Below, piece by piece: positions 16,017 to 36,771 of a DNA stretch of 64,000 nucleotides. The notes under the pieces were generated by a model, which was not told where the DNA came from, did not search any database, and was given only the letters and a program-made list of their open reading frames with translations. Each line of letters starts with the position of its first letter. Positions within the stretch are counted from its first letter, which is position 1. A program made the translations under genes and the position numbers. Origin of the DNA: Styela clava (taxonomy: Eukaryota); assembly GCF_964204865.1 (NCBI RefSeq), contig NC_135250.1, forward strand, positions 8,866,001 to 8,930,000, written 5' to 3'.

Positions 16017-17710
16017 GCAACAAATTCGCAGTTCTCATGGTCCAAAAACCAGTTTTACGTTGATCAGCAGGCCTGAAAATTCCCAATAAAAATTGCTCTG
16101 GATAGTTACAGCATTTTTCAACGCCGTCTCGATAAACATTTGTTGTGTGTGTGTGTTGTCAGGTTGCTCAATAGCTGCGTTTATGATTTGTTTGAATGAC
16201 CATACCTCACAATCAAGCGTATGCGTGTTAGAAGTTATTCTATGTTTACCTCCATATTGATATGTCGTACAAAGTTTTTTTCAGATATCAGTGCCGGGGA
16301 TAAAATGACATTTTTTATATCAGAATGGTAAATTGTAATTATAGTAGCTCTGTCTTTCGATTGCTACCGAAACTGCAAAATATACTGAAGTACTACTTCA
16401 GGAATTAATACCGAGATAATTTCTAATGTCCAGAACCACGTAACCCATTAATAAATGTAGATACGCATATAATTAAAGCTGTTTATTTTGATCCATACTC
16501 AATCTCTAGAATGAAATTTATTTCAGGTAAGATTGATTGCTTTTCACCAAATACTGAAAATCGAGACACAAATTGGTGAACATTAGTTTTGACCTTGTTT
16601 CAAGAACAAGCCGTAACAAATCATGATGGAAACATTATTTCTAATTGTACTGATAATGAATGGTGTTTCCCAATCTCTCATCGTTTGGGTTGTTTCGGGA
16701 AACCACTTGAACTTGTGTATGACTCCCTCGTTTACGTTATGTTGAATATAACTGCTTCTGTTGCCTCTCATTCGAATCGCATTCCGAGGAAATTTGTATT
16801 TATTTTGCGCACTCAAGAAGGGTTTCATCGGCAGTTTTGTTTATGCAACACAATTTTACTTTGTAAAGTTAGCTTGCGTTTATATGAGATCATTTCGTTT
16901 CTTCGTCAAACAATTTTCTTAGTTCCGTTATATAAGAATGGTTAATATAGTATGTAAGTAGGTAGGTATTTCGAATCAAAGTCCCGAAATGGGACACGAG
17001 AGTAAGATACCCATTTCTGAAGACATTCACTTCGGCGGAAACGCGAAATATATTGCAAATATCGAGGGAATACCCCAGACTGACTGCCTGCCAGATATAA
17101 GCCCAGTTTTGGAAACTACCTCAAAATTCAGTAGCGCGTTGGTGTAAAGGCAGGTAAGGTATGCTTTTTATGTCGATTATCCGACCCGGGGCGTAATAAA
17201 TTTGGTAGAGTTAAACGTTTCCGATGAGAAATCAGAATGGTGTTCAAGTCAGTTTGAATAAAAAGCTGGTTCTTTCACTCTCACACGGACAAAAATATGA
17301 ACTCGTATACACACAAATCGGAATGTACTGTTTGTTTGCGTAATGTTGCGAACGGGTCAGTCATATTACGCTTTATTTAATTTCCGCTTGGTTGACCACC
17401 ACTTCAAAACGATGAAAACCAGTTTCCGGATACCTAGCCAACATTCATGTTAGTCGCAACGAAAAGAGAATATCGATAACGACGGAAGATTTGGGGTGAT
17501 CTCCCCTGGCTGTCGTGCACAGTTGCTTATCATCAAAAAGTTGTAAAACAACGAAAGTTATAATTCCCTAGCAGTTCTCTATAATCTCAGTTCTCTATAT
17601 AAGATGGATTTCGAGATGCTAGAAACCAGTATGATTGAATTTGCGAAACTTGAATGGTTAACATCGTACGATATAAAAGATCTCCATCTTGGCAACTCTG
17701 AATAAATAAA

Positions 17711-18733
17711 ATGTCAAAGGTAAGTTTGCTTTACTTGAATTTAAAAATTCTCGGAAGAATACTATAGAGCAAAATTTATAGACTTTTGAATCAAGATCGC
17801 TAAAATAGTCATGCAGGCCAAATAGAGGCTATGCGATGTGAGTTGCCAGTAGATCTAACTACTTATAGAAGTACCAGTAGACACTTTTGCATTCTATTAG
17901 ATGGGAGTAAAAAAAATCCTGGAACTTTTTTAGGGTATTCACTATGATTTGTTATATCAGTCTATGAACAAAATAAATTAAAAAATAAATTTTCTTTAAT
18001 TTATTTTAATGTGGTAATCTGGTAAATATTTCTAACATTAAATCATAATAATCTTGTTTTAGGTAACATGTATAATTCAACTGCTTTTTATCACAATCGT
18101 AGCGGTCTCCGTCCAAGATGTTACATGTTGGGATCCATTGTAAGAAATTATATTATTTTGAGAAACTAGTTCTTGTGTAGAACAAAATATCGTGCGGATA
18201 GCCTATATATCTATTCATATTAGAGAAGAGTTTACAAAATCTGGCTTTAGATTTGAATGTATTTTCGCCATTTTGTTTCTTTAGTTGCCATGCGGATTTT
18301 AACAACCCAAATCAAGTTTGGATTTTCATTTGGTTTATGTTATGCGAGTACACCATAAAGGTTTTGCTGATATTTGTCAAGAGCCCGAATAATCAAAACT
18401 TAGCCTACATTCATGATCATGTTATTCAGTTCAGATGAATCATTGCTTTTTGGCTGTCACATTAAGAAAGAAAGCGAAGTCGCCTTAAACCTGAACTCGT
18501 TCGAACCAAAGTTGGAAATAAAAGTTGAATGCAAAGAAGGGATCGAATTTACTACTTTCATGTGTCTGCAGTTTTGCTACGATCCAGTCAATCAAAATTC
18601 TCCCAGATCGATTCCAGGCAAAGTCCTCAGAAACAAAGATTTGTTTGAGCAAAAAACGTTTAATACAACGACTCATAAACAAAGAAGAATAAAAGTTACC
18701 TATGGATGTAGATGTGTGTTGGAAGATAAATAG
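17711..18733 (+). CDS. Secreted IL-17-like cystine-knot protein 1, 129 aa
   Basis: join(17711..17719,18063..18139,18430..18733); phases 0 and 2. Signal peptide MSKVTCIIQLLFITIVAVSVQDVTC, then WDPF...FGC-x24-C-x10-C-x3-C-x43-CRCV. The gene model is strongly supported by two paralogs; the family call is an inference from P-x7-C and VTYGCRCV. Confidence 0.8.
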
Positions 18734-18787
18734 GCTTTTAAAGACCAACATACAATGTCCAATAATACTTCGCTATTTCTGCTGTCC

Positions 18788-18835
18788 TATTTATTTATTT
18801 ATTGCAACATAATTTAATTTATTATCGTATTTATA
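18788..18835 (+). promoter_or_regulatory. AU-rich element cluster in 3' UTR of IL-17-like 1
   Basis: Overlapping ATTTA pentamers (TATTTATTTATTTATT) about 55 nt after the stop; also present in paralogs 2 and 3. The AT-rich background weakens the signal. Confidence 0.5.
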
Positions 18836-19606
18836 ACATTTGCCAACTACATTATTTACTATTTTCCTACTTGAACAATCATGTTTGTTCACAATTAATT
18901 ATTTTTTGGGTATGCAATGAATATAGGTAATTATGGCTGCGTGTTAGTTATATGGTCCATCAATGTCTCTTCTCTACATGAGTACACAAACAGATGCGTC
19001 TCGGTGAACCAAAGTAAAAGTTCATTCCCTGGGTCAATTAAGCGCCATCATAACATGCTGTGAATCAAGTGCCATGCTAACGGGTATTCTGAGTTCTTGT
19101 CATGCCTAGATGGTTATGTGATCAATACTTCGTCACGGCTAATTAAATATATAGGTAGATTGTGGGAATCTTAAAAGAGAATATTTGAGCCAGACTAAAA
19201 GTTCAGTTTCATCAAATTTCATAATATTCAAATCCTCCTCTTTATAAATTGAAAATAGATTGCTCATTAGTCAGAAAATGGCGTCATATATTCTGATATT
19301 ATTTGAAAAATCCTCGAATGTATAAATCCCAATTTCATATTGGATTAACCTCATGGACTATGTGAATCTTTGATTAGAATAGTGTAAGAAATAATGAATA
19401 TTTTTATAGATCCGACTTTTATTATTAGATCGTGCCTATACGTTCATATTTAGACAGGGGCTTTATAGAAAAGAATTATTCATTTTACTAAACGATGTTA
19501 CCAAGAGTCACTTTCCATTTTTCTATTTAATTTACGCATACCTTATAAATACTAACCAACACAGATCCATTTTGATATCATTATAGACTATAGAGACTGG
19601 GGTCAT

Positions 19607-20126
19607 CAGTGGCGTAGCATCCACCCCCGCAACCTCCGCGGTCGCGGGAGGGCCCACATCGCAAAGGGGCCCATGCGGTTAGAATTTAGAAATTGAAGCC
19701 GCAAAACCAAAAGCTGCATTGCAAAACCATTGATGCACATCTTATAACGTTGATGTTAGTTCTGCTCAAATCGTTTTGTCACGTAACAATGCCAGGGAGT
19801 CGTCGATTTTCGGCATGTTGCGGTTTGATCGCACCGGCAAAATTACGAAGGCTGTCTGAATGATGTCGAAAGCAAAACCTCTCAGTGGCGCACAGAAACG
19901 CAGAAAAGGGGCAGAAGAGGAAGCACGTATGAAAAAATTTAAGTAACCAATAAGTAACCAAGATAAACGGCAAATTTTAGGTTTTTTAATAGCGACATGT
20001 TATGCTTTTTGACGAAATGAAAAAAGCGTTGTTTTAGCCTATGTCCGAGAGTTTTTTGGGTCATTTCCACGAAATATTTTTGCGGGGGGGGGGGGGGGGG
20101 GGCACGAGAGTCTTGCTACGCCACTG
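19607..20126. mobile_element. hAT MITE, 520 bp
   Basis: Perfect 13-bp TIR CAGTGGCGTAGCA; perfect 8-bp TSD GGGGTCAT; absent at the paralogous site near 30610. Confidence 0.93.
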
Positions 20127-20330
20127 GGGGTCATGAGCGCGAAATCCCATTCTCCAATAATAACAACAACGGAATATGCCATTGTATTTCCTCACTCTTT
20201 CGTTTGGCTAGTCGAATACGAAACATACTAGGAAGTAGTTGTCAGAAAATTGGAAAAAATAAAAAAACTTCGAAGGAAACAAATCTGGCTCTCGATTATA
20301 ATTAATCATCTATTTATACAATGAAGTAGT

Positions 20331-20597
20331 TATTATTTATCGATTTTAATCGGTAAGTATGTTGATAGGTATTTGTCTACTTGATAGGTATATTTAATCT
20401 ACTCCAGATTTTGCATATGCATTCATCATATGTCGTACCAGAAGCCTATTGATTTTGGATAAATTATGTCAAATAATTAGCGAGTTATCAATTAATTAGT
20501 GATGGGACACAAGGTGTCACTATGGAGTAAGAGCGCTGTTTTGGGGGATCCCCTAACTTTCGATCGATAAGTCTTTGGTCTCTCACCGATTTCTCGT
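20331..20597 (-). mobile_element. Helentron-associated (HINE/pearl-like) short insertion
   Basis: Absent from the paralogous site near 30785. Minus strand starts ACGAGAAATCGGT, has an internal GGGGATCCCC palindrome and ends in hairpin TTACCGAT-TAAA-ATCGATAA; no TSD. Superfamily is inferred. Confidence 0.5.
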
Positions 20598-20866
20598 AAT
20601 ATATCGCACTGTCACTGATTTAACTCCTATTCATTTTTGTGCTTTCAAGAACGTCGTAAAACTGCAGGGCATATTTCGGGTGCACATATCGGGACTCAAC
20701 ACATGGAAAACTTCAAATTAAATTTGTGATGTTACTTTAAACAAAACTTTTACGTGTCAAAATAACATCGGAATATAAGTTTACTAAAGAATTAGATATC
20801 AACGTCATTTACAGCTACATCTGTTGTACATCTGGGAAATGTATAAATGATAAGTGATTTCATGAC

Positions 20867-21177
20867 CCCTTGCATAGTATTATTATCTAAATTTTTAGGA
20901 TTTATTTCGCACCTATACATTTCCCCTAAATTTTCGTTATTGATTACGTAAACATCTATAGCTATGCGTGCTCAAACGTCATGACATGGACTGACGTCAT
21001 AGTATAATAACGGGTTCCCCTTGAATAGTATCATGATCTAAATTTTTATGATTTATTTAGCACCTATACATTTCCCTAATTTTTCAATATTAATTACGTA
21101 AACAAATATATCTATGGGTGCTCAAACTGCATGACATCATTCTATTGACTGACGTCATAGTATAACGATGAGTTCTC
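20867..21177 (+). repeat. Local tandem duplication of about 150 bp carrying TTACGTAA and TGACGTCA
   Basis: Two diverged units (20867-21017, 21018-21177); single copy in unit B (31141-31300). Confidence 0.8.
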
Positions 21178-21899
21178 ATTTTCGTCACAACAATAGAAAA
21201 ATCGTGTTGTGTGTGAAGCATAAGCGGAAGTGTTGTCAAATGACCAGGTTTAACTTCAAAGCAAATCAAGCTAGCTGTCGGTTGAAATAAATTGTAGAAT
21301 TGCACAATTAGGTTAATATTTAAAATACATCACCCTGCGGACACAATGAATAGATGTGTTTTCTGTTACAACATTCCTCTTTTCGTCTCTGTTATTGTAA
21401 TGAATGGTGATATTTATATCAGGCGCAGATTAGTTATTAGCATTAATATCCTGCAGTTCGAAGTTTTTACAGTCTATTATTTGAAGGCTAGCGTCAGAAA
21501 ATCATAAACTTACTTAAAAAATTGATAACAACATCGTTTTCAACTACTATAAATAAACAAACGAAATAGTACTTGTTGTGTAATTAATTGGTATAAAATG
21601 TTCACGGTGCCTGCATTGAAGTGTAGTTTTTTATATCTTTACATTCCGAACACAATTATTTCAATCTATGATTCTCATTCAGGATTCGAAATATAAAAAA
21701 TTGGGATCCGGGATGAACAAGGAAAGTTGAATTTTTTGCCAAGTCACGATTTTTTCGATGAGTTCGAAGAGTATGGCGCTTAGTATTTTATTAGCAAATG
21801 ACTTTTTTTTAGTCATTATCAAGTGTTTATGTTAATAACAATCAAATACATTTTTTTGTTCAACTACTAAACGAATAAGGTGTTCTAAGTATAATGTGA

Positions 21900-22210
21900 G
21901 ATTTTTTTATCGAGAAATATCATGATATAGTTGTCATAAACTAAACATATCAATCCAATTGGTAATATAAAACTGGGTGTCTATTGCATTACATGAATAA
22001 GAGGCATTTTGGCGATCTATAATCAGAACGGTGATTTCTGACAGATAAGGAGTTTTGTGAGGGGAATAACCTGGTAAACGGGACATATATGTGTTCCTCG
22101 ACATTCCGCGATTTCACGATTTTATCAGAATGGTGATTTTCGACGAATCGGGGGTTAGGTGCGGGGAAGAATAAATTTATTATCTTTTGGTATGTCCCTA
22201 TTGTTTAGAT
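21900..22210 (+). pseudogene. Candidate decayed cystine-knot (IL-17/Trunk-like) exon, unit A copy
   Basis: Homologous to 24620-24935 and 31750-32105; KTGCLLHY...IIRTVIS...FCEGNNLVNGTYMCSSTF with stops and frameshifts. Confidence 0.3.
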
Positions 22211-22601
22211 AAAAATGTGAAAAGAAAGGAAAATAAACTGGTTATGGTAAAATCATGATTGATAAATTACCCTTTCCAATTGGACTTAATTTAGGGCTTT
22301 AGGCTATAAAACTGTACCATCGCTTCATTCCGCTGACAGCCAATCAGGTTTTCTTCCTGCAAAAATGCCTTTTTTAATTTTGTCTTTTAAATGTAATGTA
22401 CATCTCCCCCCAAATTATTACCAAACTAAAACAGCCATTTTACCATAAGTTATATACATATCTATAATAACGATGATGATAAAATATGTCAAAATATTGA
22501 TTCGGTTCAATTCTTTTTCAACAGTCAACACCTGTTATTATTAGCACACAACCTATGACTTCAAATTTGTCCTATATTATATGTAGTAAAGTGAAAGTAT
22601 C

Positions 22602-22980
22602 CTAAATAAAGAACGGACGACGTGGCTTAACACAACTACATTGTTGTAATTTTGCGTCGCTTACGTTCAGATTGCTCAGCGGTATTTTCATTCATGAAGC
22701 ATAAAAGGAATATATCATGAGACTCAATGGCCCAAAAATAATATGCTTGACATAGTTGAACCCATAATTCGAGGGAGATAAATTGACAGCATAAATTCAA
22801 TCGTTTGCGAAAACTTTCCCACACGAAAAAATGTCAAGTAACGTCATAGATCCTGAAAATTCTTGAAATTTTCTCTTTGTTATAGCCTTCTTAATTTTAT
22901 TTTAAATTTGAAAAATGAGACAACAGAACTAACTCTGTGCGATGATGTGCGGAACTCCTTCGGGGTGAGAACACACTTGT
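22602..22980 (-). pseudogene. Candidate decayed IL-17-like exon, unit A copy
   Basis: Acceptor, then QVCSHPEGVPHIIAQ...; ends QCSCVKPRRPFFI*. Homologs at 25330-25641 and 32440-32610; multiple disablements. Confidence 0.3.
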
Positions 22981-24348
22981 CTAAAAAATCCAAATAAATG
23001 AATGAAATAATTAAATACGATTTCAACATTGCGTAACATTCGATTATGATGTCAACAGTATGTTGGCATCGGTCGTTAGATTTGAGGAAGAAAATGGCTG
23101 CTATCAAATTAAATAAATAGTCAACATTACGTAATTACTTTGTCTTAGCCTTTAGACCATATTCATTACATCACAGTCACAATTCTCAGTACTGTAGACT
23201 CAAATATTTTAGGGAATTGTCTATGCAATTTTCACAAACTGGTTGATGGGAATGGACTACTGTAAGGATGAATTCGATTTATTTGATTTGTTTCAAATTA
23301 CGTAATCAACTTACCATTTTAATGTTTGCCGTTACTTACTAAAGTTGTTCCCCTTTCCTGAACTCACGAAAAAAGTCTTCCGCGGTTGGTAGTCCTGTCA
23401 TTTTCTGAATTTATGTGTTCAGGACAGGATAACAAGTGGGGTAAAAATATCCGACCTTACTGTAAGATGTTTTAACCATTGAATGGGGGTTTTCAATCAG
23501 AACAATACTGAACAACGACCACCACCCCAAGTTATAGCAATGTATTAAATATTCATGGTGCAAGTATTTATTAGAAAACGAAAACGAATTCATAAAAAAA
23601 ATGTTTTCAAATAAATATAAATGAATAAAAAACCAGAATCAAGAGAATGTATGAAAGTATTTTCAAATATTTAAATAAACACTTTATATATATTTTACAT
23701 TTATATGACGTGTATGATTTTGTATAATAAGACAGGGCGAAGCATAACCATTGATAACTCAAGTTAAATCGAGGTTATTTTACTAAAGCAAATTTGGAAT
23801 TGCTTGAAATGTCTACTTGAAAAAAATTCCAAGTGTAGAGTTTTTAATCACCACATCAGTGTCAGCAACATGAATTTAAGCGTTTTAGCAGGGTTAAGCT
23901 AAAAATGAAATTAATATTAAATTTCATAGTGACACATAAAAAAGACCGAAAATATATTTTCTGAGGAATTAAAATGCAATGAACAACAAAGTTTTTTGCA
24001 ACCATATCTTACGTTTATTCCTCTCTACTTTCCACCAAACAAAACAAAAGTTTTTTTTCTGACAAATCAACATTTTTAAATACTTTTCTTGGTTATAAAT
24101 TTGGCTACCCTTCTTGCTGGAAAGGGTTAAAACGTTTATTATTATCATTCTTGCATTCATTATATCTGTCAGTAATAATTAACACCCATAAAATATCCCC
24201 ACAGCTGATGCGGGTTGTTTTGAATTCCGTGCTTACTCGAGTGCAAACAGGTAAATGCAGCCGAGATATCCTGCAAAAGTCGGGATCAATATTTACATTA
24301 CCTAAGCCAGCTTATAAGCGTATGGGCTGTCTATCTAACCTTGAATGT

Positions 24349-26490
24349 TCACGGCTAATTAAATATATAGGTAGATCGGTGGGAATCTTAAAAGAGAATA
24401 TCTAAAAGTTCAGTTTCATCAAATTTCATAATATTCAAATCCTCCTCTTTATAAATTGAAAATAGATTGCTCTTTAGTCAGAAAATTGCGTGACATATTC
24501 TGATATTGTACGAAAAATTCTCTAATATATAAATCCCAATCTTATATTAGATTAACCACATGGAACATACCAAATAATTACAGTCTACTTGGCATCATGT
24601 GAAATTGCTTTACCGCCAAACATCATGATATGGTTGTCATAAAAAAGTATATCAACCCAATTGGTAATACAGAGCTAAGTGAAAAGCATTTTTGCCCAGC
24701 TATTAAAAAACGGTGATTTCTGACAAATATAGAGTGTTGTGAGGGGAATAACCTGGTAAACGTGACATATGACGTGTTCCTCGACATTCCGTGATTTCAC
24801 GAATTTATCAGAATGGTGATTTTCGACGAATCGGGGGTTAGCTGCGGGGAAGAACCTGGTTATCGTTACGGTTACATCCGTCGAGGTCCAATAAGTTATA
24901 TTATCCTTTGTTATGTTCTATCCCTCTGTTTAGATAGAAACATTAATTTAAAAAAAATAAACTGGTTATGGTATAACCATGAGTGATGAATTACACCTTG
25001 TAATCGAACTTCAATAAGGCTGTTGAACTGTACGATCGCTCAATTTTACTGACGTTCAATCAGGTTTTCTTCCTGCGAAAATGCCTTGTTTATTTTGGCT
25101 TTAAAATGTAGTGTACATCTCCTCCCAATTTATCACCAAACTAAAATAGCATAATTCACCCTAAGTTATATATACATATTTATTTAACGATGATGATGAA
25201 ATATGTCAAAATATTTATTTGTTTTTCACTTCATTTTGAATAGTTAACTCTTGCACAGTCAACACCAAACAACCTATCACTCCAAATTCGTCCCATACTA
25301 TATATAGTAAAGTGAAAGTATCTTGAATAAAAAATGAACGACGTGGTATACCATAACTACATTGCGACTCTTACATTCAAATTAATCAGCGGTATTTTTA
25401 TTCATAAAGCACTAAAGAAATGTACCATAATACTCAATGGCCCAATAATACTATATTTTGAACAGAACACTTTTCTACATGAAAAAATATCAAGTAACGT
25501 CATAGACTCTGAAAATTCTTGAAAGTTTCCGTTCTCTTTTGTTAAAGCTTCTTTAATTACCTTTAAATTTCAAAAATAATACAACAGAACTGGCTTTGTG
25601 TGATGAAGTGCGAAACTCATTCTGGGTTAGAACAAACTTGTCTAAAAAATCAGAATAAAAAAAAAATAAATTAAATACGATTTCGACATTGCAAAATTAT
25701 TCGATTATTATTTTTACAGTATGTTGACATCAGTCGTTATATTTGAGGAAGAAAATGGCTGCTATCAAATTAAATAAATAGGCAACATTACGTTATTACA
25801 TTGTCTTAGAATTAGTGTAAGATGGTTTACCCATTGAATGGGGATTTTCAATTAGAACGATACTGAACAACAAACACCCAATTTTTTGCAATGAAGTAAA
25901 TATTCATAGTGCAGGGATTCATTAGAGAAACGAAAACGAATTCATAAAAAAATTAGTTCGAATGAATAACAATAATTTAAAAAACGAGAATAAAGAGAAT
26001 GTATGAAAGTATATTCAAATATATATTTAAGTAAACACTATGTTGCGCTTATTCTTCTCTACTTTCCATCAGACAAATCAACATTTTTAAATATTTTTCT
26101 TGGTTATAAATTTGGCTACCCTTCTTGCTGGATAGGGTTAAAACATTTATTATCATCATTCTTGCATTCATTATAACTGTCAGTAATAATTAATACCCAT
26201 AATATATCCCCACAGCTGATGCGGGTTGGTTTGAGTTTCGTGCTTACTCGAGTGCAAACAGGTAAATGTAGCCGAGATATCCTGCAAAAGTCGAGATCAA
26301 TATTTACATTACCTTAATCAGCATAAAAACGTATGGGCTGTCTGTTTAACCTGGAATTTTGACAGTTGCGATGAATCTCCGATTTTCTCGCGCACTCTTT
26401 TCTGAAGCGCCTTCTGCTTTCGGTCCATCGACATGCATACCGGCTATATGCACAAAATCACACCCGAACTAATATTTGCTCTATCCCAAA
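24349..26490 (+). repeat. Partial tandem copy A' of 19133-24346 with internal deletions
   Basis: Junction TCACGGCTAATTAAATATATAGGTAGAT matches 19133; blocks match about 19133-19355, 21915-23145, 23460-23680 and 24010-24345. Confidence 0.88.
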
Positions 26491-26491
26491 A

Positions 26492-26585
26492 CAGGGGTGT
26501 ACAACCCTCGGCCCGCAAGGAAAAATTGTGCAGCCTGCGGAAACGTGCCAATTCTGAATTGTGTGTAGCCTGCGAAGCGAGGTTT
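26492..26585 (+). mobile_element. hAT MITE left end (right end not identified)
   Basis: CAGGGGTGTACAACC..CGGCCCGC terminus that interrupts homology with 34170; similar terminus at 54172. Confidence 0.55.
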
Positions 26586-28964
26586 CAATTCATTTTAATT
26601 TGGTACGTGCGAAGAATTGCGATCCCTTTGCGTTGAGGGGTTATACCTGAGTCAAACAAATAATCTAGCACTCAACTTATTCGCTGAGTGTTTACACAGA
26701 ATAAGAAACATGTTAAATCAGTAACTGACTAGAGAGAAAAAAGTCATATGTCAGAATTACGTTTTTAAAATTTGGTTCCAATAAAAAAAAATCAGACATT
26801 CAGCTCGACCTTTGGCGGACATAAAATAAACAAAATGGCGGCGATTCGAAATATTTGTTTGAACCGATTCGAATAATTTACTTTGTTCATTTTGCAGACC
26901 CAAACACTCCATTTTTGAGTTTTGTCCATATGAGGGACCCGATAGCATTGTACGAATCCCCTTACAGCTACATAAAGTATATATACATTTTTTGTAAAAT
27001 TCACAAAAATTCTTTTCAAATATTGTTACGTTGATTTGGCCACATTTAATCCAAAGATTTAGAAAGTACAAGTGATTGCGATGGAATAAATAAAATTTCC
27101 TTTTTTTTCCAAAATCAGAATAATTTGTTGAAGCAAATACCACGTAAAATTCGTATGCTGGATGGTCAATTTGGCTGGCCAGAAAGAAAACTCTGTTATC
27201 ATCTATGTCAGTCAAAAATTCCGCCGTGGGGGAGTCTCTGGTAATAAATGACTGTAAAGTATCTCATTCAGTTATAATCGCATAAACACGAAAAACACGG
27301 ATCTAGTAAGGCCCAAGATTGGAAGGTGGGTCATTATATCAATAATACTTGGATCTATCACTCAACCGAATCATGCGTACAAATGGAATCGATAACAACG
27401 ACAACAGCGATCATGAAAATAAAACCGTTATATCTGTATTGGCTGAAACGAACGAGATCGTTATTAAAATTATTTCAATACCTTTTGTCTTTTATTGCGA
27501 GTAAACGGTGTTTTTACCGATCCCGAGTCGCTTGAATATGCCTTGTACCTTAGACGCACTTGCGGACAAGTCATTATCAATTTGATTTTTTGTTAAAACA
27601 ATTTCCCTTTTTTTATTCTATTAGAATATTTAATTATATTATTTAAATAAAGTAACCCCGTCTCGTGTTACCGAAACTGCAAAATATACCGAAGTACTAC
27701 TGGTATTCAATCCGAGGTTATTTCTGATGGTTGAAACCACGGAACTATTAAATGAAGCTGTATCTTTTGACTAAATTTTATTTCAGGTAAAATTGCTTTT
27801 TAACAAATAAAGAATTGAAAATCGAGACGCAAATTGGTGAAGATTAGTTTTGACTATGTTTCAAAAACACCTCATTACAAATCATGATTGAAAACATTAT
27901 TTCGAATTTTACCTAAAATGAATGATGTTTCCCAAACTCTCAGCGTTTGGGTTGATTGTTTTGGGAAACTACTTGAACCTGTTTAATTGAGGTTTCTTCG
28001 TTTACGTTATGTTGAATATAACACATTCAGTTGCTTGTTGTTATTGTGCGAAAGGTTCCATCGGCAAGTTTTGTTTATCCAAAACAATTGTATTTTGTAA
28101 ATTCTGCTTGCGTTTATATGAGATCATTTCGTTTCTTCAGCAAAACAATTTTCTTAGTTTCGTTATATGAGAAAGGGTGATATGGTGTGTAATTGGATGG
28201 GTATTTCGAATCAAAGTTTTCAAACGGGACACGAGAGTAAGATACCCAGAACTAAGGACATTCATTTCTGTGGTAACGCAAAATATATTACAAACTTCGA
28301 GGCAATATCCAAGTTATAAGACCTGGTATTGGAAACTACCTCAATATCACGGTAACGCATTAGTGTATAGGCAGGTAAGGTACTTGATAATGTTACAGTC
28401 AAAGAGGTGTCGGTCGCCATGCCCGGTCCTGCTTTTCATGTATATTATCCGACCCAGGGCATAATAAATTTGACGAGGCTGAACGTTTTCGATGTGAAAG
28501 CAAAATGATGTTCGAGTCAGTTCGATTGTAAAGCTGGTTATCCCAATCTCACACACGAACAAAGATATACACACGTATACACACATGTTTGAATGTACGG
28601 GTTGTTTGTGTAAACTTTAGGGTCAATCATATTCCGCTTTGTTTAATTTCCGCTTGGTTGACCACCGCTACAAAACGATGTAAACCAGTTTCGAGGTAGC
28701 TAGCATTCATATCAGTCGATACGAAGAAAGAATATCGATAACGACGAAAGATTTGAGGTGATCTCCCCTGGCTGTTGTGCATAGTTACTCATCATTATAG
28801 AATTGTAAAACAACGAAATTTATAATTTCGTAGCAGTTCTCCAGAAAGGTACATAAGATGGATTTCAAGAAGGTAGTAATCAGTCTGAATGAATTTGCGA
28901 AACTTGAATGGTCAACATCGCATAGTATAAAAGAATTCCACCTAGGCAACTCTGAAAGAATAAA

Positions 28965-29979
28965 ATGTCTAAGGTAAGTTCGCTTCACTTGATATTGAAT
29001 ATACTTTGGAGAATACTACAGAAAAAAAATTATAGAGTTTTGAATCAAGCTGGCGAAAAATAGTGAAACAGGTTATGAGTCGCCAGTAGATCTAACTCCT
29101 TATAGAAGTACCAGTAGAAACCTTTGTATTCTCTTAGATGGTAATAAAGATGAAGTACTGGAGCTTTTTGGGGGATTCATTGTGATGTGCTTTATTAGTC
29201 TAAGAACAAAATAAATTTAGTTGATTTATTTTTATTTTAAATATTTTTAACATCAAATAATTTTCATCGTCTTTTAGGTAACATGTATGATCCAACTGCT
29301 TTTTCTGGCAATCGTGGCGGTCTCTGTCAAAGACGTTACATGTTGGGATCCCTAGTAAGAAAACATTATGTACTTATTTTATTTTAATGAGATAGTTTTA
29401 GTGCATAACAAACTATCGCGGAATAGTTTATTCAATTTTTTACACTATGGAGATCATATTTCATCCTTTGTTCTGCCAGATTTGAAATTATTTTCGCCAT
29501 TTTTTTTATACCATTGTTGATTTTTTTTTAGTTGCCTAGTGGGCTTTAAAAACCTAAGTCAAGTTTGGATTTTGATTTGTTTCATGTTGTGATATCATAA
29601 TAGTTTTATTAATATTTGTCAAAAGCCCCAAATATTCGAAAATTATTTTACACTCATCATGATCATGTTATTCAGTTCAGATGAATCATTGCTTTTTGGC
29701 TGTCACATAAAGAAAGAAAGCAAAATCGCTTTAAACCTGAACTCGTTCGAACCAAAGTTGGAAATAAAAGTTGAATGCAAAGAAGGGATCGAATTTACTA
29801 CTTTCATGTGTCTGCAGTTTTGCTACGATCCAGTCAATGAAAATTCACCAAGGTTGCTTCCAGGCAAAGTTCTCAGAAACAAAGATTTGTTTGAGCAAAA
29901 AACTTTTAATACAACGACTCAAAAACAGAGAAGAATAAAAGTGACATATGGATGTAGATGTGTATTGGAAAATAAATAG
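28965..29979 (+). CDS. Secreted IL-17-like cystine-knot protein 2, 129 aa
   Basis: join(28965..28973,29278..29354,29676..29979); same exon sizes as paralog 1 (9/77/304); 117/129 aa identical by manual count; AATAAA at 30185. Confidence 0.8.
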
Positions 29980-30036
29980 GATTTGAAGACCGATTAACAT
30001 TGTACAATAATACGTCGTTATTTATGACTGATGTCC

Positions 30037-30105
30037 TATTTATTTGTTTATTTATTTATTTATTTATTTTTTGTAAGAGTAATTAATTTATTGTCATATT
30101 TATAA
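30037..30105 (+). promoter_or_regulatory. AU-rich element cluster in 3' UTR of IL-17-like 2
   Basis: (TTTA)n run giving four overlapping ATTTA plus further copies. Confidence 0.5.
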
Positions 30106-31749
30106 CATTTGCCAACTACATTATTTACTATTTTTCTACTCAAACAATCATGTTTCTTCACTATTATTAATTTTTTGCTTATGCAATAAATATAGTTATT
30201 TATTGCTGAATATTAGTTATATAGTCCGCCATAATCACAATTTCATATTAGATTAACCACATAGACTATGTGAATTTTAAGTAAACTGAGTGTGAAAAAT
30301 TATATATATTATTTTATAGATCCTAATTTATATTATTAGACCATGGCTTATTGGGTAATTCCGAAACAATTTTACTTGAAACAGCATTAGAATTTGACTT
30401 ATTGGGATTTATTCTCCATTTTTTTAAATTTATTATATGGATTACGTAAGCATTAATGGTGTCATTATGAGTAATGTTTTTAAACACGTTCATATTTAGA
30501 CAGGAACGCTTTAATGAAAATAAATATTTAATTCTACAAAAGAGGATTTACGCATACCTTGTAAATATGAACCAACACATATCCTTTTTGACATCAATAT
30601 AAAGACTGGAGTGAGCACAAGTTCCTATTCTCCCATCACAACATTTTGTTTTCCTTTTCTCATTCTGTCGCCTGGCTAGTCAAATAAGAAACATACCAAG
30701 ACGTTGTTACTTTGAAACGAACAAATCTGGCTGTCGATTGTAATTGATCGTCTATTTAGTATTTATACAATAAAGTACATGTTTAATATATCACACTGTC
30801 ACTGGTTTAACACGTAATTATTTTTTTGCTTTAAATAACGTCGTAAAACCCCAGTATATATTTCGGGCTCAGATATCGGGGCTTAACATATGGAATACCC
30901 CAAATCAAATTTGTGATTCTATTTTGAACAAAACTGTTACGTGTCACAGTAACACCGGAATATAAATTAGCTGAAGAATTAGATATCAACCCCATTTACC
31001 GCTACATCTGTAGAAGTTGAATATACCCAAAAAAATTCAACAAGGGGGAATATTTGAAATATTCTCGATCGTACAAATTCCAATTTGTAGATCCTGGCTC
31101 ATATTATATTGTACCTGATGGGTGATTTCGTGAAAAATTACCCCTTGAATAGTATGATTATCTATATTTTTATGATTCATTTCGCATCTAAACATTTCCC
31201 CAAATTATCAATATTGATTACGTAAACATCTATCGCTATGGGTGCTCAAACGTCTTGACATCATTCTGTGGACTGGCGTCATAGTATAAAAAATGGGTTC
31301 TCATTTTTGTCACAACAATAGAAAAATTTATGTCTGTGTGTGAAGCATATGCGGAAGAGTTATCAGATGACTAGATTCAACTTCAAAACAAATAAAGCTA
31401 GCTGCCGTAAATAAATACACGAAACAGAAACATCTAATTAATTGGTATAAAATATTAGGTATGGTGCATAGAAGTGTAGTTCTTAATATCGTTACATTCC
31501 GAACACAGTTATTTCAATCTTTGATTCTCATTCAAGATTTGAAATATAAAAAAAATTGGGCTCCGGGATGAACAAGGAAAATTGTCAAGTCACGATTTAT
31601 TCAATGAGTTCGAAGAGTATGGACTTTTGTATTTTAATAACAAATGACTTTCTTTCAGTTATTATTTAGTGTTTATGTTAATAACAATCAAACATATTTT
31701 TTTGTTCATCTACTAAACGGATATGGTGTTCTAAGTATAATGTGGCTTT

Positions 31750-32105
31750 TATCGTGAAATATCATAATATAGTTGTCATAAACTAATCATATCAATCCAA
31801 TTGGTAATATAGAACTGTATGTCCATTGCATTTCATTAATGAAAATCCTTTTTGCCGAGCTATAATCAGAACGGTGATTTCTGACAAATATGGAGTTTTG
31901 TAAGGGGAATAACCTGGTAAACGGGACATATTTGTGTTCCTCGACATTCCGTGATTTTTACGTATTTATCAGAATGGTGATTTTCGACGAATCGGACGTT
32001 AGCTGCGAAAAAGAACCTGGTCGGTCAACGGGGCGTATACGTTTGTCAGGGTCCAATAAATTACATTGTTATGTTTGTTGTGTTCCTATTCCTCTGTTTA
32101 GATAA
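31750..32105 (+). pseudogene. Candidate decayed cystine-knot (IL-17/Trunk-like) exon, best-preserved copy
   Basis: From 31811 RTVCPLHFINENPFCRAIIRTVISDK; after a frameshift EFCKGNNLVNGTYLCSSTFRDFYVFIR...SCEKEPG...LHCYVCCVPIPLFR*. Confidence 0.38.
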
Positions 32106-35100
32106 AGGAAAATAAACTTGTTATGGTATAACCATGCGTGATAAATTACACCTTCTAATCGAACTAATTCAAGCTGTTAGTACGATCGCTTTATTCCACT
32201 GACGGCAAATTAGGTTTTCTGTCTGCGAAAATGCCTTGTTCAATTTTATCTTTAAAATGTATTGTACATCTTCACCCAACTTATTAACAAAATAAGACAG
32301 CTATTTCACAATAATGCATGATACTTATAATAACGATGATGATAAAATATGTCAAAATATTTATTCGGTTCAATTCATTTTTAACAGTCAACACCTGTTA
32401 TTTTTGAATATATTTACCGTGATAGTAGATACGTTGGAGAACACATCCCCACATGCAAAATATCATGTTACGTCATAAATTTAAAAAAATTCTTGAAAAC
32501 GTTCTCTTCGTCATAGCTTCTTCAATTAACTTCGAGTTTGAATAGGAAGACAACAGAACTGGCGTTGTGCAATGATGTGCGGAACTCTTTCGGGGTGAGA
32601 ACAAACTTGTCTAAAATATCAGAATAAATAAAAAATAAAAATTAAATACGATTTCAACATTGCGATATCATTCGATTATGATAGCTACAGTATGTTAACA
32701 TCGGTGGATTCATTTGAGGAACAAAATGGCTGCAATCAACTTAAATAAATAGACAATATTACGTAATTAGTTTGTCTTACAAAGTAGATCCTATTCATTA
32801 CATCACAGTCACAATTCTCAGTACTGTAGACTGTTAACATTTTAGGGAATTGTCTATGTAATTTTCACCAACTAGTTGTCGGGAATGGACTATTGTAATG
32901 ATGAATTTGGTTTATTTGATTTGTTTCAGATTATGTAATCAACTGACCATCTCAATGTTCGCCGTTAGTTAGTGATTGAAGTTGTTCCCCTTTCCAGAAA
33001 TCACGAAAAGAGTCTTCCGCGGTTGGTATTTCAGTCATTTTCTGAATATGTGTGTTTGGGACAAGGTAACATCACAAGTGAAGTAAGAATATCCGATCTT
33101 ACTGTAAGATGTTTTAATCATTTAATGGGTTTTTTTAATTAGAACGATACACTCACTTTGTGGAGTCCAACGAACTATTCTGAACAACAATCACCCCAAG
33201 TTATAACAATGTAGTAAATATTCATAGCGCAAGTATTTATTAGAAAAATGAAAACGAATTTATAAAAAAAATGATATCAAATAAATAACAATAAATTAAA
33301 AAACAAGAATAAAAGGATGTGTGAAAGTATTTTCAAATAAATATTCAAATGAACACTTTATATACATATTACATATTCAAGACGTATTTATAGATTTTAT
33401 ATAATAAGGAAGGGCGAAGCATAATCATTGATAACTCCAGTTAAATCGAGGTTATTTTTGAATTGCTTTAATGATTTTATAATTTTCAAATTAATATTTT
33501 TTCATCATATGTTGAAGGAAGTAATGTACGCGTAAAAAAGTGTAGAGTTTTTTAATCACCATATCAGTGTCAGCAACATGAATTGCAGCAAAAAATGAAT
33601 TCAATATTAAATTTTACAGTGACACATAAAAATAATTCAATAAATATCTTCTGAAGAATCAAAATGCAATAAACAACAACGTTTTTTGTAATCATATGTT
33701 TTATATTTAATTTCGTGTCGGGACCGCGTCTAAGAACATCGCTCCTGGTTTTGGTTTCAGTTTAAAAACCAAAATCTGTTATGCTTTTCACCCATGGGTT
33801 CTATTTTTGTTCATGCCGCTGTTACCTGTATACTATTGATTTCTACGCTTCACTTCAATGCTTTTTCACTATATATATTGCTTCGATACGGATAATATAT
33901 ACCCACAGCTGATGCGGTTTTGTTTTAAATTCCGTACTTACTCGAGTACAAACAGAAAAATGCAGCCGAAAATACCGTGTACAATTCGAGGTCAATATTT
34001 TACATTACCTGAGCCATCTTATAAACGTATGGGCTGGAATTTTGACAATCACGGCGATTCCCCGATTTTCTCGCGCACTCTTTCCTAATGCGCCTACTGG
34101 TTTCGGTCTATCGAAATGCATACCGGCTATTTGCACAAAATTAACCTTGATCTACCATTTGCTCTATCCTGAATCGTCGTCAAAGCTACCGTTTGGCGGT
34201 ATTTGAGCAAATATAAAACTAAGTGAGTGTAAACAATTACCAACGTATAAGCAATTGATGCCCCTGTATGTACAGCGCCTGGGCAGGATGAGATTTGTGC
34301 AAGATGTTTTTTAATTTTGGGTTGGCCAGTCCGCTTATATCTGCAATTATTACGGCGCACAAGGTAAGAAAACAAAATACGTTGACCAATCTTTCAAATG
34401 TCGAGATCGTTGTAAGCCCAATGAAGCAGTCAATATCATCAATGGCTGAAGATGTTTTTCGTTCGCAAATATTGCACAGAGGTATACTATTATTCATCGC
34501 GATTTGGTCAAATGTGCTTAAATTACTCTGGAACTATTTCAAATCATCTGTTACCTGTGAACTCCCGAATTAAAGGCACGAAGGTATGTGACCTCTCGAT
34601 TATATTTATTCAATCATGTTGATGATGTAACGGTGCTAAAACAGTACTCCTGTAACACAAATCCTTCATCAAATTTACTCAATGAAAGAACAATTTAATA
34701 CCGCAATAAAACACAAATAAGGAAACAATCAACTTTCATTGTACAAATATTCTGTCTATACTGTAGGTAACCTAATAAAAGTATACGGACGAGTCCACTC
34801 AAATGGCGACTAACGTCGTAGATCAATCCACCTTTTATTAATCCTTCACAGCGGGAAGTCCCCTAACTTACTCATTGCGCAAATAACTTACAATTTGGAT
34901 ATTTACCTCTAAATATAAGCTAGTGTTGTTCCCTTTCTCGAAAAAGACCGCGATGAGTTTTTCGAGATCTCGGAAATTTCTACGTTAACGAGTCATGGCA
35001 AAGCATGATGCAGGAGTATATTAGAAAAATGTACACAAATTCGTAAAAATATTTTAAATAAATAATTTGGTAATTAATTTATGATTAGATTATTTACATA

Positions 35101-35258
35101 TATGTGGCTTATTTTTATTATTGTTAAGGCAGGCAGGGCTAAGTAGAATTAATAATAATTAGAGTGTAATCGAATTTATTAAGTCGACATAAATTTCATA
35201 TGGCATAATTTTTTTCTATTTTAGTTTAAATGTTGATACAAGTCATGGTAGAAAAATT

Positions 35259-35368
35259 GAACTTCCTGAAGTATGCGCACCAAGATGGCGCACAACCTGA
35301 ACTCAGGTTATGTACCAGGTTAGGGTTCAGGTTGTGCGACATCTCGGTGCTCACACTTCAGGAGTACC
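35259..35368. mobile_element. 110-bp foldback MITE
   Basis: 39-bp inverted arms 35264-35302 / 35325-35363 (35/39 match); flanking direct repeat GAAAAATT; related copy at 15828. Confidence 0.8.
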
Positions 35369-35615
35369 GAAAAATTACATACTGTGCAAAAAAGAAGTAA
35401 CATAAACCTGAAATACGGCATTGTCCTTTCAATAAAAATGAAATATTGGTCTGCGGGCATTCTCAACATCGTATAATATTACATCGGGAATTTTAGCAGT
35501 AAACTATGATTGAAATCCAAAATACAACAACTCAAAAATATGCTGACAACGATAAATATACATAAATAAATATATAAATATTCTGCGAATAAATATAATA
35601 ATAGCCAAAATGAAG

Positions 35616-36771
35616 TTAATTGTCACGTTTCCGAGGTCTATCTACCAGGACACATCGGCAGCCATATGTGACGTTTACCCTTCTTTGCGTTCCATTAGGC
35701 AAATCGAAAGTTTTTTCTTCAGACAGATCAACATTTTCGAAAACTGTGTCTGTTTTCGAAACGGGTGACGCTTGTTGAACAGGGTCGTAGCAGAAGTTTA
35801 AGCACATGAACGTTTGGAACTCTATACCGCCATCGCATTCAACATTAACCATCAGTTGCGGTTCAAACGAGTTCATGTTCAACTTGACCTCGCTGTCTTT
35901 TGTTAAGTTACATCCAAATCTTATCGCTTCGGGCGAACTGAAAAAAAATAGAATATTCGTGTTTCTATTTCAAAATTTCAAAAATCACGGATGGGATTAG
36001 TATTTCCGATGTTCAAGCTAGAACAAAACGTCCAGATTGGAATTTTATTCCGTGTGATCCAGCGCCTAAAATTGATTCCAACCAAGACCAAACAGTTCAT
36101 ATTGTAGTTTAGAATAAATGACACATCTACTCTGAAAAACACCTGCAAGAAGTACCACACTAGAATTTTTCAAGTTTATTTATCTGGACATTAATTGGGC
36201 CAGAATTTAAAAATCCAGCTCGAATCACAATTGTATGCAACTTTTCGTTGATAGTGGAATTCAGTACCTCAGCTCAGTTGATTTCCTGTTTCTATTGACG
36301 CAAACGGCTTTAAATCTTGCGTCAATCGGTGGTATTTACCAATGCGCGGTCCTACATTATAACGCTTTTAGTGGCTCTTGGCCTTTTAGTGGTCACCGTA
36401 GCTTCGCTCAGTGATTATCTTTTAAATTGATTGTGTGATTTCTCGTTACTTTGCTTTGAGTGATTTTTCTTAAAAAACATCTCACGCCTTCTTATGTTTG
36501 AACTTTCGAAAATAATAGAAATAAATGGTTTATTTAATATGTTATACCTTTTTCACAATGTAAATACTTGGTAAACTCTAACTAGAAAAATATCTGAATT
36601 ATACATACTTGGGGTCCCAACATGCAACGTATATCGGACCAAAAATCGACATCAACATTGCCATCAGCGGTAAATTGAAAATGCTCCTTATCTGTTAAAC
36701 AATGTTGAAATATATTGCATATTCTAAGTTGAAGGTGACGCTGATTTTGTTTCAACACTTACTTGAGCCAT
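35616..36771 (-). CDS. Secreted IL-17-like cystine-knot protein 3, 137 aa
   Basis: complement(join(35616..35937,36609..36691,36763..36771)); MAQIRSIFNLPLMAMLMSIFGPIYVAC-WDPNSPEAIRFGC...VTYGCRCVLVDRPRKRDN. Same intron phases and Cys spacing as paralogs 1 and 2; N-glycosylation sequons NLT, NGT, NVT. Confidence 0.8.

What the first reader, a model, noticed from the sequence alone, without database searches (positions are those of the whole stretch)
17711..36771. Family of three divergent secreted cystine-knot proteins with an incomplete knot: candidate novel IL-17-like cytokines
Seen: three intact genes with the same structure (9-nt first exon, signal-peptide exon, phases 0/2), mature N-terminus WDP and invariant C-x24-C-x10-C-x3-C-x43-C-R-C-V. 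Known: IL-17, PTTH/Trunk and noggin share P-x7-C before knot Cys II (IL-17A RYPSVIWEAKC; here FEPKLEIKVEC). IL-17 ends V-x-V-G-C-T-C-V (here VTYGCRCV) and lacks the penetrating I-IV disulfide. Inference: the Cys IV position is Asn here (RNKDL/ENVDL), Cys I is kept, and a 10-residue insert plus an extra Cys sits between Cys II and III. This implies a rewired disulfide or an inter-chain bond that I do not recognise from described IL-17s. An alternative reading takes CLQFC as a glycine-less CxGxC of the glycoprotein-hormone class. The ORF track shows only fragments, so automated annotation could miss these genes.
Basis: partly seen in the sequence, partly recalled or inferred. Interest (0 to 1): 0.85.

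Follow-up and report, generated by a model that had tools for sequence, protein, structure and literature searches.

The report
Divergent IL-17-fold secreted proteins, sea squirt
Three real, spliced genes in this Styela clava (sea squirt) window belong to a ten-gene family of small secreted proteins whose predicted shape best matches the cytokine IL-17, although standard sequence profiles do not recognise them and NCBI lists them as uncharacterized.

Summary
Genes A and B (+ strand) and C (- strand) each have three coding exons: 9 nt, then a signal-peptide exon, then one exon for the whole mature domain. All introns are GT-AG. The cysteine spacing C-x24-C-x10-C-x3-C-x43-C-R-C-V is invariant. 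Each model equals an NCBI Styela clava "uncharacterized protein" exon by exon, so annotation did not miss them. Spliced contigs from two studies show both junctions of gene C.

The family is larger than reported. The genome holds 10 paralogs in three clusters, apart from at least 32 canonical Pfam-IL17 exons elsewhere. This scan had already noted the pair at C1:7.73 Mb as IL-17-like (s1-812127).

Sequence searches do not place the family: Pfam IL17 reaches E 0.26, and PDB sequence searches give nothing significant. Two AlphaFold models (pLDDT 85 and 79) give a cystine-knot growth-factor fold. IL-17A, IL-17F and IL-25 are the best structural matches both times (Z 7.5 and 5.5); NGF is next (6.0 and 4.3).

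The structural alignment puts C-L-Q-F-C and C-R-C on the four IL-17 knot cysteines. Lack of the Cys I-IV bond is normal for tunicate and vertebrate IL-17s.

Verdict: a divergent IL-17-like variant. Receptor, dimer state and function are untested.

The parts
17672..17679 (+). TATA-like box (tataaaag) about 32 nt upstream of the gene A start codon
   Evidence: Direct reading. The same octamer sits upstream of gene B. Promoter function is inferred, not shown.
17711..17719 (+). Gene A, coding part of exon 1 (MSK), followed by GT
   Evidence: Matches residues 1-3 of XP_039251744.2 (P0007).
18063..18139 (+). Gene A exon 2: hydrophobic signal-peptide segment ending C-W-D-P, phase 0 to 2
   Evidence: Exact match to P0007 residues 4-28. 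Flanked by AG and GT.
18430..18733 (+). Gene A exon 3: the whole mature IL-17-fold domain (100 aa plus stop)
   Evidence: AlphaFold model m764e9c5a5bec has pLDDT 85. IL-17A/F are the best structural matches.
28926..28933 (+). TATA-like box upstream of gene B
   Evidence: Direct reading.
28965..28973 (+). Gene B, coding part of exon 1 (MSK)
   Evidence: Matches P0001 (XP_039251733.2).
29278..29354 (+). Gene B exon 2 (signal peptide, ends C-W-D-P)
   Evidence: Exact match to P0001 residues 4-28.
29676..29979 (+). Gene B exon 3 (mature domain)
   Evidence: It is 95% identical in nucleotides to gene A exon 3, within an 11.25-kb tandem duplication.
36763..36870 (-). Gene C exon 1: about 100 nt of 5' UTR plus 9 coding nt (MAQ, 36771-36763)
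   Evidence: Spliced contigs reach 36865-36870 and join 36763 to 36691. Sequence read.
36609..36691 (-). Gene C exon 2 (signal peptide, ends C-W-D-P)
   Evidence: The joints 36691|36763 and 35937|36609 appear in contigs of runs X1, X3 and X4. Exact match to P0010.
35616..35937 (-). Gene C exon 3 (mature domain, 106 aa plus stop). The transcript continues as 3' UTR to at least 35400.

Best explanation
The three genes encode small secreted proteins (129, 129 and 137 aa). They belong to a ten-gene Styela clava family that is a strongly diverged branch of the IL-17 cytokine superfamily.

Structure. After the signal peptide, one exon encodes a cystine-knot growth-factor domain made of two long beta-hairpins. 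I infer that two disulfides tie the hairpins together, C45-C93 and C49-C95, matching IL-17A C94-C144 and C99-C146. The third, ring-penetrating Cys I-IV bond is absent, as in all vertebrate and tunicate IL-17s. Two further conserved cysteines sit in the N-terminal arm (C9) and in the turn of hairpin 1 (C34). They probably form an extra bond, either within one chain or between the two chains of a dimer.

Function. The most likely role is a dimeric extracellular signal read by the animal's FN3-SEFIR (IL-17R-type) receptors.

Shown: the genes, their splicing, purifying selection, family size, and the predicted fold with IL-17 as its nearest structure.

Inferred: common descent with IL-17, the disulfide pairing, dimerisation, the receptor, and a cytokine role.
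For: Gene reality:
- The gene models equal RefSeq proteins exon by exon.
- Spliced contigs from two studies carry both junctions of gene C.
- dN/dS between A and B is 0.14.
- The genome holds 10 paralogs. For two of the C13 copies (L005, L009) I mapped the same three-exon layout.

Fold:
- AlphaFold model 1 (gene A): pLDDT 85.4, pTM 0.69. Model 2 (paralog L008): pLDDT 79.4.
- Foldseek against PDB ranks IL-17F and IL-17A on top, with probability 0.97-0.99 and TM 0.53-0.63. NGF chains score 0.3-0.6 probability and TM 0.3-0.44.
- VIA-align against 48,161 PDB representatives, model 1: IL-17A Z 7.2 (78 aa, 3.4 A), IL-25 6.6, NGF 6.0, then about 30 other cystine-knot factors.
- The same search with model 2 gives IL-17A 5.5, IL-25 5.1, IL-17A 5.0 and NGF 4.3.
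- In the second-look alignment of model 1, all 50 best entries are IL-17A, IL-17F or IL-25, with Z 6.1-7.5.
- The alignment ranges superpose the four knot cysteines of the two folds.

Weak sequence signals pointing the same way:
- Pfam IL17 aligns residues 65-97 to profile positions 53-81, at E 0.26.
- hhalign against canonical Styela IL-17 exons aligns the C-terminal V-T-x-G-C-R-C-V with I-x-V-G-C-T-C. Probability is 44% over 12 columns.
- Language-model features put IL-17 clusters first for two paralogs only about 30% identical to each other (scores 0.91 and 0.89; 179-183 shared features).

Context:
- The genome holds at least 7 SEFIR matches and at least 32 canonical IL-17 exons, so the pathway is present and expanded.
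Against: - No sequence search gives a significant link to IL-17. Pfam scores 12 bits against a 24-bit cut-off. The PDB profile searches return no IL-17. The genome-wide PF06083 scan does not pick up these loci.
- Structural Z-scores of 5.5-7.5 are middling. NGF lies within about 1 Z unit of IL-17. The fold is shared by many unrelated-function ligands.
- The ring is C-x3-C, not the C-x4-C of IL-17.
- The S-P-W and R-Y-P motifs of IL-17 are absent.
- Gene structure differs. Canonical Styela IL-17 genes appear to split the domain just before R-F-P, whereas this family encodes it in one exon.
- The homodimer test gave no verdict.
- No model coordinates were available, so disulfide pairing was not inspected.
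- There is no functional, induction or receptor evidence.
Confidence: 0.6

Rival explanations
1. This is a lineage-specific cystine-knot ligand family that is not derived from IL-17. It could be a remnant of a Trunk/PTTH-, Spaetzle/NGF- or noggin-like gene, or a convergent loss of the Cys I-IV bond. It would signal through a non-SEFIR receptor such as a receptor tyrosine kinase or an LRR receptor.
For: - Only the generic fold is shown with confidence.
- NGF scores Z 6.0 and Gremlin-1 scores 5.5, within 1-2 units of IL-17.
- The 8-membered ring, C-x3-C plus C-x-C, is that of the TGF-beta, PDGF and DAN classes rather than IL-17 (my own knowledge).
- There is no significant IL-17 sequence match.
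- The gene structure differs from canonical Styela IL-17 genes.
Against: - IL-17 chains take every top place in four structural rankings, on two models from paralogs about 29% identical.
- A two-disulfide knot without Cys I/IV is the stated hallmark of olfactorean IL-17 (PMC11087794).
- Three weak sequence signals all point to IL-17 and to nothing else.
- PTTH scores only Z 4.2 and 3.8, and Spaetzle 4.8 and 3.2.
Confidence: 0.25
2. This is a secreted knot-scaffold protein with a non-signalling role, for example an antimicrobial or defensive effector, a binding antagonist of other ligands as in the DAN/noggin proteins, or a tunic or matrix component.
For: - Rapid tandem expansion to 10 genes in three clusters is typical of effector families.
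- Gremlin-1, NBL1, sclerostin and noggin, all ligand antagonists, appear among the structural hits at Z 3.4-5.5.
- There is no functional evidence for signalling.
Against: - The antagonist families carry many more cysteines and a complete knot.
- IL-17 ranks above them consistently.
- Canonical IL-17 genes are also tandemly expanded in this genome, so expansion does not tell the two readings apart.
Confidence: 0.1
3. The N-terminal half is chemokine-like. It has C or CC, then about 24 residues, then C, then a further stretch ending in I-C-x-D-P. On this reading the proteins act as chemoattractants through GPCRs.
For: The family profile's best PDB sequence matches are the CC chemokines CCL7 and eotaxin, over profile positions 8-58 at E 0.33-0.76. 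The paralogs L008 and L010 carry an N-terminal C-C pair.
Against: - The E-values are at chance level.
- Both AlphaFold models lack the chemokine C-terminal helix. They show a long C-terminal beta-hairpin instead.
- No chemokine appears in any structural ranking.
Confidence: 0.03

Closest known systems
IL-17 family cytokines (Pfam PF06083): human IL-17A/F and IL-25, Ciona Il17-1/2/3, and the 'T2' knot type of PMC11087794
   Same: - Small secreted proteins.
- A cystine-knot growth-factor fold with two long beta-hairpins.
- Four knot cysteines at structurally equivalent places: C...C, about 43-44 residues, then C-x-C-V near the C-terminus.
- No Cys I-IV bond.
- An N-terminal arm that carries an extra cysteine.
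- A C-terminal V-x-x-G-C-x-C-V motif.
- Tandemly expanded genes in a genome that also holds SEFIR receptors.
   Different: - No significant profile match (12 bits against a 24-bit cut-off).
- The ring spacing is C-x3-C, not C-x4-C or C-x-C-x2-C.
- F-E-P stands where S-P-W lies, and there is no R-Y-P motif.
- The extra cysteine pair is C9 with C34 in the hairpin-1 turn. In IL-17A/F (from memory) it is the N-arm with the strand 3-4 loop.
- The whole domain lies in one exon.
- Dimerisation and receptor binding are untested.
Neurotrophins and Spaetzle (NGF fold)
   Same: The same fold class. NGF scores Z 6.0 and 4.3; Spaetzle scores 4.8 and 3.2. Both are parallel-dimer ligands.
   Different: NGF and Spaetzle keep all three knot disulfides and have a much larger ring (C-x9-C in NGF, from memory). 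There is no Pfam NGF or Spaetzle hit. They rank below IL-17 in every search.
Eight-membered-ring knot families (TGF-beta, PDGF/VEGF, DAN/gremlin, glycoprotein hormones, CTCK)
   Same: The ring spacing is C-x3-C plus C-x-C.
   Different: Those families have Gly in the middle (C-x-G-x-C) to let the third disulfide pass, and they carry 7 to 11 cysteines. Here the middle residue is Gln or Pro and no third knot disulfide exists. Z-scores are 3-5.5.
PTTH / Trunk (Torso ligands)
   Same: Cystine-knot ligands, which PMC11087794 regards as the closest relatives of IL-17.
   Different: Z is only 4.2 and 3.8. By PMC11087794, Trunk is conserved from cnidarians to amphioxus, with tunicates not included. 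Its knot is complete.

Membership tests
IL-17 (Pfam PF06083) | Significant match to the IL17 sequence profile (gathering cut-off 24 bits) | tested here: not met
   Only gene A matched, at 12.2 bits and E 0.26 over residues 65-97. The other 12 family members did not match. The genome-wide PF06083 scan lists 32 other loci and none of these.
IL-17 (Pfam PF06083) | Cystine-knot growth-factor fold, closest to solved IL-17 structures | tested here: met
   Two AlphaFold models have pLDDT 85 and 79. IL-17A, IL-17F and IL-25 are top in Foldseek (probability 0.97-0.99, TM up to 0.63) and in VIA-align (Z 7.5 and 5.5), ahead of NGF. The Z values are middling.
IL-17 (Pfam PF06083) | Four knot cysteines (C..C ... 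C-x-C) with Cys I and IV missing, the 'T2' type of olfactoreans | tested here: met
   C45, C49, C93 and C95 are invariant. No cysteine lies between C49 and C93 in 12 of 13 members. The alignment ranges put them on IL-17F C72, C77, C122 and C124 (IL-17F numbering from memory). The spacing is x3, not x4. The actual disulfide bonds were not seen.
IL-17 (Pfam PF06083) | Conserved S-P-W and R-Y/F-P strand motifs | tested here: not met
   Canonical Styela IL-17 exons carry R-F-P-x7-C. This family has F-E-P at about the structural position of S-P-W, and nothing at R-Y-P.
IL-17 (Pfam PF06083) | Forms a parallel homodimer | tested here: inconclusive
   The two-copy complex scored 0.46 and one unrelated control scored 0.45, so there was no verdict.
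IL-17 (Pfam PF06083) | Binds a double-FN3/SEFIR receptor and signals through CIKS/Act1 | not testable with these tools
   At least 7 SEFIR matches exist in the genome. No binding test was possible.
Neurotrophin / Spaetzle | Complete three-disulfide knot and a match to the NGF or Spaetzle profile | tested here: not met
   No Cys IV. No Pfam NGF or Spaetzle hit. They rank below IL-17 structurally.
Glycoprotein-hormone / DAN / CTCK class | C-x-G-x-C ring with Gly, a penetrating disulfide and 8 or more cysteines | tested here: not met
   The ring reads C-L-Q-F-C or C-L-P-I-C, without Gly. Only six domain cysteines are present. LH-beta, FSH and GPA2/GPB5 score Z 3.1-3.9.
CC chemokines | Chemokine fold (three strands plus a C-terminal helix) and a significant profile match | tested here: not met
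   E is 0.33 at best. The models have no C-terminal helix. No chemokine appears in the fold searches.

The most novel reading that the evidence does not exclude
The family is a separate cytokine class that kept the IL-17-type two-disulfide knot but rewired its dimer lock. The conserved C9-C34 pair would form inter-chain bonds between the N-arm and the tip of hairpin 1, an arrangement not described for IL-17. Such a dimer might engage a receptor other than the canonical IL-17R pair. Tunicates would then have a second, parallel IL-17-like signalling axis.
Probability: 0.15. Interest if true: 0.65.

Novelty: new variant of a known kind. Interest (0 to 1): 0.45.

Why it matters
Tunicates are the closest living relatives of vertebrates. 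IL-17 is one of the few cytokine systems shared across animals. A ten-gene family with the IL-17 fold that standard profiles cannot see means that domain-based IL-17 counts for tunicates are underestimates. Ciona is said to have three IL-17 genes, and Styela shows at least 32 canonical exons in this scan.

The family also offers a natural experiment in how far the ligand can drift. It has a smaller ring and a relocated extra cysteine pair, yet keeps the fold. The practical gain is that ten 'uncharacterized' RefSeq loci receive a testable functional hypothesis.

Tried and rejected
- **Pfam on the three last exons and on all 13 family members:** nothing significant.
- **PDB sequence profile searches with 3 and 13 sequences:** only chance-level hits, to HerA at E 0.23 and CC chemokines at E 0.33. 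I rejected the chemokine reading on fold grounds.
- **hhalign of the family against 12 canonical Styela IL-17 last exons:** only 12 C-terminal columns aligned, at 44% probability. This is suggestive, not proof.
- **Profile search of 1.84 billion representative proteins:** five hits only. Two are Styela proteins. Three are unnamed Logan/ENA proteins, P0004-P0006. The word-index search with the 13-sequence profile added one more Styela protein.
- **Homodimer prediction:** no verdict, since a control scored as high as the query. It counts neither for nor against dimerisation.
- **Model coordinates:** not available to scripts, so I could not measure cysteine-cysteine distances in the models.
- **Literature:** no paper in the held library links Styela clava to this family. 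The supplement of PMC11087794 is not held.
- **Spliced proteins:** I built no joined protein of my own and sent none to any search. Searches used exon references or proteins returned by the databases.
rejected. The motif exists in both families, but the structural alignment puts it on different strands.
Full report
**What is there**

The window is Styela clava chromosome-scale contig C1:8,866,001-8,930,000. Three small genes sit at the reported places.

- Gene A (+): coding exons 17711-17719, 18063-18139 and 18430-18733.
- Gene B (+): coding exons 28965-28973, 29278-29354 and 29676-29979.
- Gene C (-): coding exons 36771-36763, 36691-36609 and 35937-35616.

All six introns are GT..AG, with phases 0 and 2. 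Exon 1 contributes three codons. Exon 2 holds a hydrophobic signal-peptide segment ending in C-W-D-P. Exon 3 holds the whole mature domain. A tataaaag box lies about 32 nt upstream of the start codons of A and B.

The last exons align without gaps over 100 residues. A and B are 93% identical and A and C are 60% identical.

**The genes are real, and they are already annotated**

Exon by exon, the three models equal three RefSeq proteins. These are XP_039251744.2 (LOC120329243, gene A), XP_039251733.2 (LOC120329234, gene B) and XP_077971770.1 (LOC120348655, gene C). All three are named 'uncharacterized protein'.

Contigs from three public runs in two studies skip exactly 35937|36609 and 36691|36763, with GT..AG ends on the minus strand. 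They extend about 100 nt upstream of the ATG. So gene C is transcribed and spliced as modelled, and the '9-nt exon' is the coding tail of a first exon of about 108 nt. The runs are only guessed to be RNA, but intron-less contigs with canonical splice boundaries are hard to explain otherwise.

A and B lie in an 11.25-kb tandem duplication. Exon 3 is 94-95% identical between them, against about 70% for the introns and 81-85% for the flanks. dN/dS is 0.14. This indicates purifying selection.

Searches used exon references or proteins the databases returned.

**The family is larger than three**

A six-frame profile search of the whole genome finds ten intact last exons:

- the three in this window;
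- two at C1:7.735-7.742 Mb;
- five at C13:8.015-8.042 Mb.

Two of the C13 copies were mapped against their RefSeq proteins and have the same layout: a short first coding exon, a signal-peptide exon and a phase-2 last exon. I did not map the other three C13 copies or the C1:7.73 Mb pair. The C13 copies do not have the W-D-P motif.

Across 13 sequences the invariant residues are V-x-C (C34), T42, C45, C49, D51, P52, and T-x-x-C-R-C-V-L at the end. C9 is present in every sequence that reaches that far.

Outside Styela, a search of 1.84 billion representative proteins finds only three unnamed Logan/ENA proteins.

My own search independently recovers that pair as paralogs.

**What the proteins are**

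Sequence methods are nearly blind here.

- Pfam gives nothing significant. The best hit to IL17 is 12.2 bits, E 0.26, on residues 65-97 aligned to profile positions 53-81.
- PDB sequence profiles give only chance-level hits.
- The same genome holds at least 32 canonical Pfam-IL17 exons elsewhere. None coincides with this family.
- hhalign against twelve of those canonical exons aligns only the C-terminal ...V-T-x-G-C-R-C-V with ...I-x-V-G-C-T-C. Probability is 44% over 12 columns.

Structure prediction is clearer. The model of gene A's last exon, built with the 13-sequence alignment, has pLDDT 85.4 and pTM 0.69. Its strands are 27-33, 39-45, 64-78 and 84-99, forming two hairpins. A second model of the distant paralog L008 (29% identical) has pLDDT 79.4 and the same topology.

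- Foldseek against PDB ranks IL-17F and IL-17A first, at probability 0.97-0.99 and TM 0.53-0.63. The E-values are only about 0.3, as is usual for such small proteins.
- VIA-align against 48,161 PDB representatives gives IL-17A Z 7.2, IL-25 6.6, NGF 6.0 and Gremlin-1 5.5. About thirty more cystine-knot factors follow.
- For the second model the order is IL-17A 5.5, IL-25 5.1, IL-17A 5.0, NGF 4.3 and PTTH 3.8.
- In the second-look alignment, all fifty best entries are IL-17A, IL-17F or IL-25. Z is 6.1-7.5, with 75-82 residues aligned at 2.5-4.7 A.
- Language-model features independently put IL-17 clusters first for both gene A and a C13 paralog.

So the knot fold is well supported. IL-17 is consistently, though not overwhelmingly, the nearest known family.

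**Which cysteine is which**

The alignment ranges are model 18-99 on IL-17F 43-128, with 76 residues aligned, and model 17-100 on IL-17A precursor 64-151. These are compatible only with C45/C49 lying on the IL-17 C-x4-C pair and C93/C95 on C-x-C. Putting C34 on the first knot cysteine would leave too few residues to align.

It is therefore not supported. F-E-P falls at about the S-P-W position at the start of strand 1, and C34 sits in the turn of hairpin 1. The P-x7-C motif does exist in canonical Styela IL-17s, but on the other strand.

It does not imply glycoprotein-hormone kinship (Z 3.3 or less).

The ring is one residue smaller than in IL-17 and has Gln or Pro where eight-membered-ring families have Gly. 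That fits the absence of a penetrating disulfide. No member but one has any cysteine between C49 and C93, so Cys IV is indeed missing.

This is not unusual. [quoted passage not shown]

What is particular to this family is the conserved C9/C34 pair. By inference these two bond to each other within a chain or across a dimer. The Cys in C-W-D-P, and the extra Cys in the C-C of L008 and L010, could add an unpaired cysteine.

**How it most likely works**

- Shown: secretory-type gene products under purifying selection with an IL-17-like fold.
- Inferred: they act as dimeric extracellular ligands for IL-17R-type receptors. The genome has at least 7 SEFIR matches. In the related ascidian Ciona, three IL-17 genes and an IL-17R are known and respond to LPS (PMC6707023).
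- Not settled: the homodimer test returned no verdict. No expression-pattern or induction data were available.

I put 0.6 on 'diverged IL-17-superfamily ligand' and 0.25 on an independent knot-ligand family with another receptor. I put about 0.1 on a non-signalling knot-scaffold protein and about 0.03 on a chemokine-like reading. The last rests only on E 0.3 matches and is contradicted by the models.

**Novelty and verdict**

This is a new variant of a known kind: an unannotated, profile-invisible, tunicate-restricted branch with the IL-17 fold. It has altered ring spacing, a relocated accessory cysteine pair and a one-exon domain.

Interest is moderate. The finding gives ten 'uncharacterized' loci a testable role. 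It also shows that domain-based IL-17 counts in tunicates are too low. However, PMC11087794 already reports that many IL-17-related sequences are too divergent for standard detection.

Noticed in passing
window 16900-19000 and 28140-30230: Genes A and B sit in a tandem segmental duplication with a period of about 11.25 kb. The flanks are 81-85% identical and exon 3 is 95% identical. The duplicated upstream part includes a short ORF, GHESKIP...GNAKYI (16989-17147 and 28167-28319), of unknown meaning.
   Followed up: partly
window 21934-22104, 24623-24787, 31792-31947; repeat families D2, D3, D7 and D9: Several interspersed repeat copies of 160-300 nt, 69-92% identical, lie between the three genes. 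Some carry a recurring short ORF, MSRNT..SRLPGYSP..LSEITVLII. They are probably transposon remnants.
   Followed up: no
G000 C3:14.84-14.87 Mb, C3:2.19-2.23 Mb, C5:15.02-15.08 Mb, C2:18.35-18.38 Mb (loci L011-L022): Canonical Pfam-IL17 last exons are strongly expanded in Styela clava. There are at least 32 matches, mostly in tandem clusters, against the three IL-17 genes reported for Ciona (PMC6707023). They share R-F-P-x7-C-L-C-K-G-C-I-D-P ... G-C-T-C.
   Followed up: partly
L008 and L010 (G000 C1:7,735,974-7,742,001): The two most divergent paralogs have an adjacent C-C pair at the N-terminal cysteine position, giving seven domain cysteines. The family profile also shows a chance-level resemblance to CC chemokines over its N-terminal half (E 0.33).
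   Followed up: partly
P0002 against window 36609-36691: The older RefSeq model of gene C (XP_039251853.1, 125 aa) starts at an internal Met. It differs by one residue in the signal peptide, Asn for Ile. This is probably an allele or an assembly-version difference.
   Followed up: no
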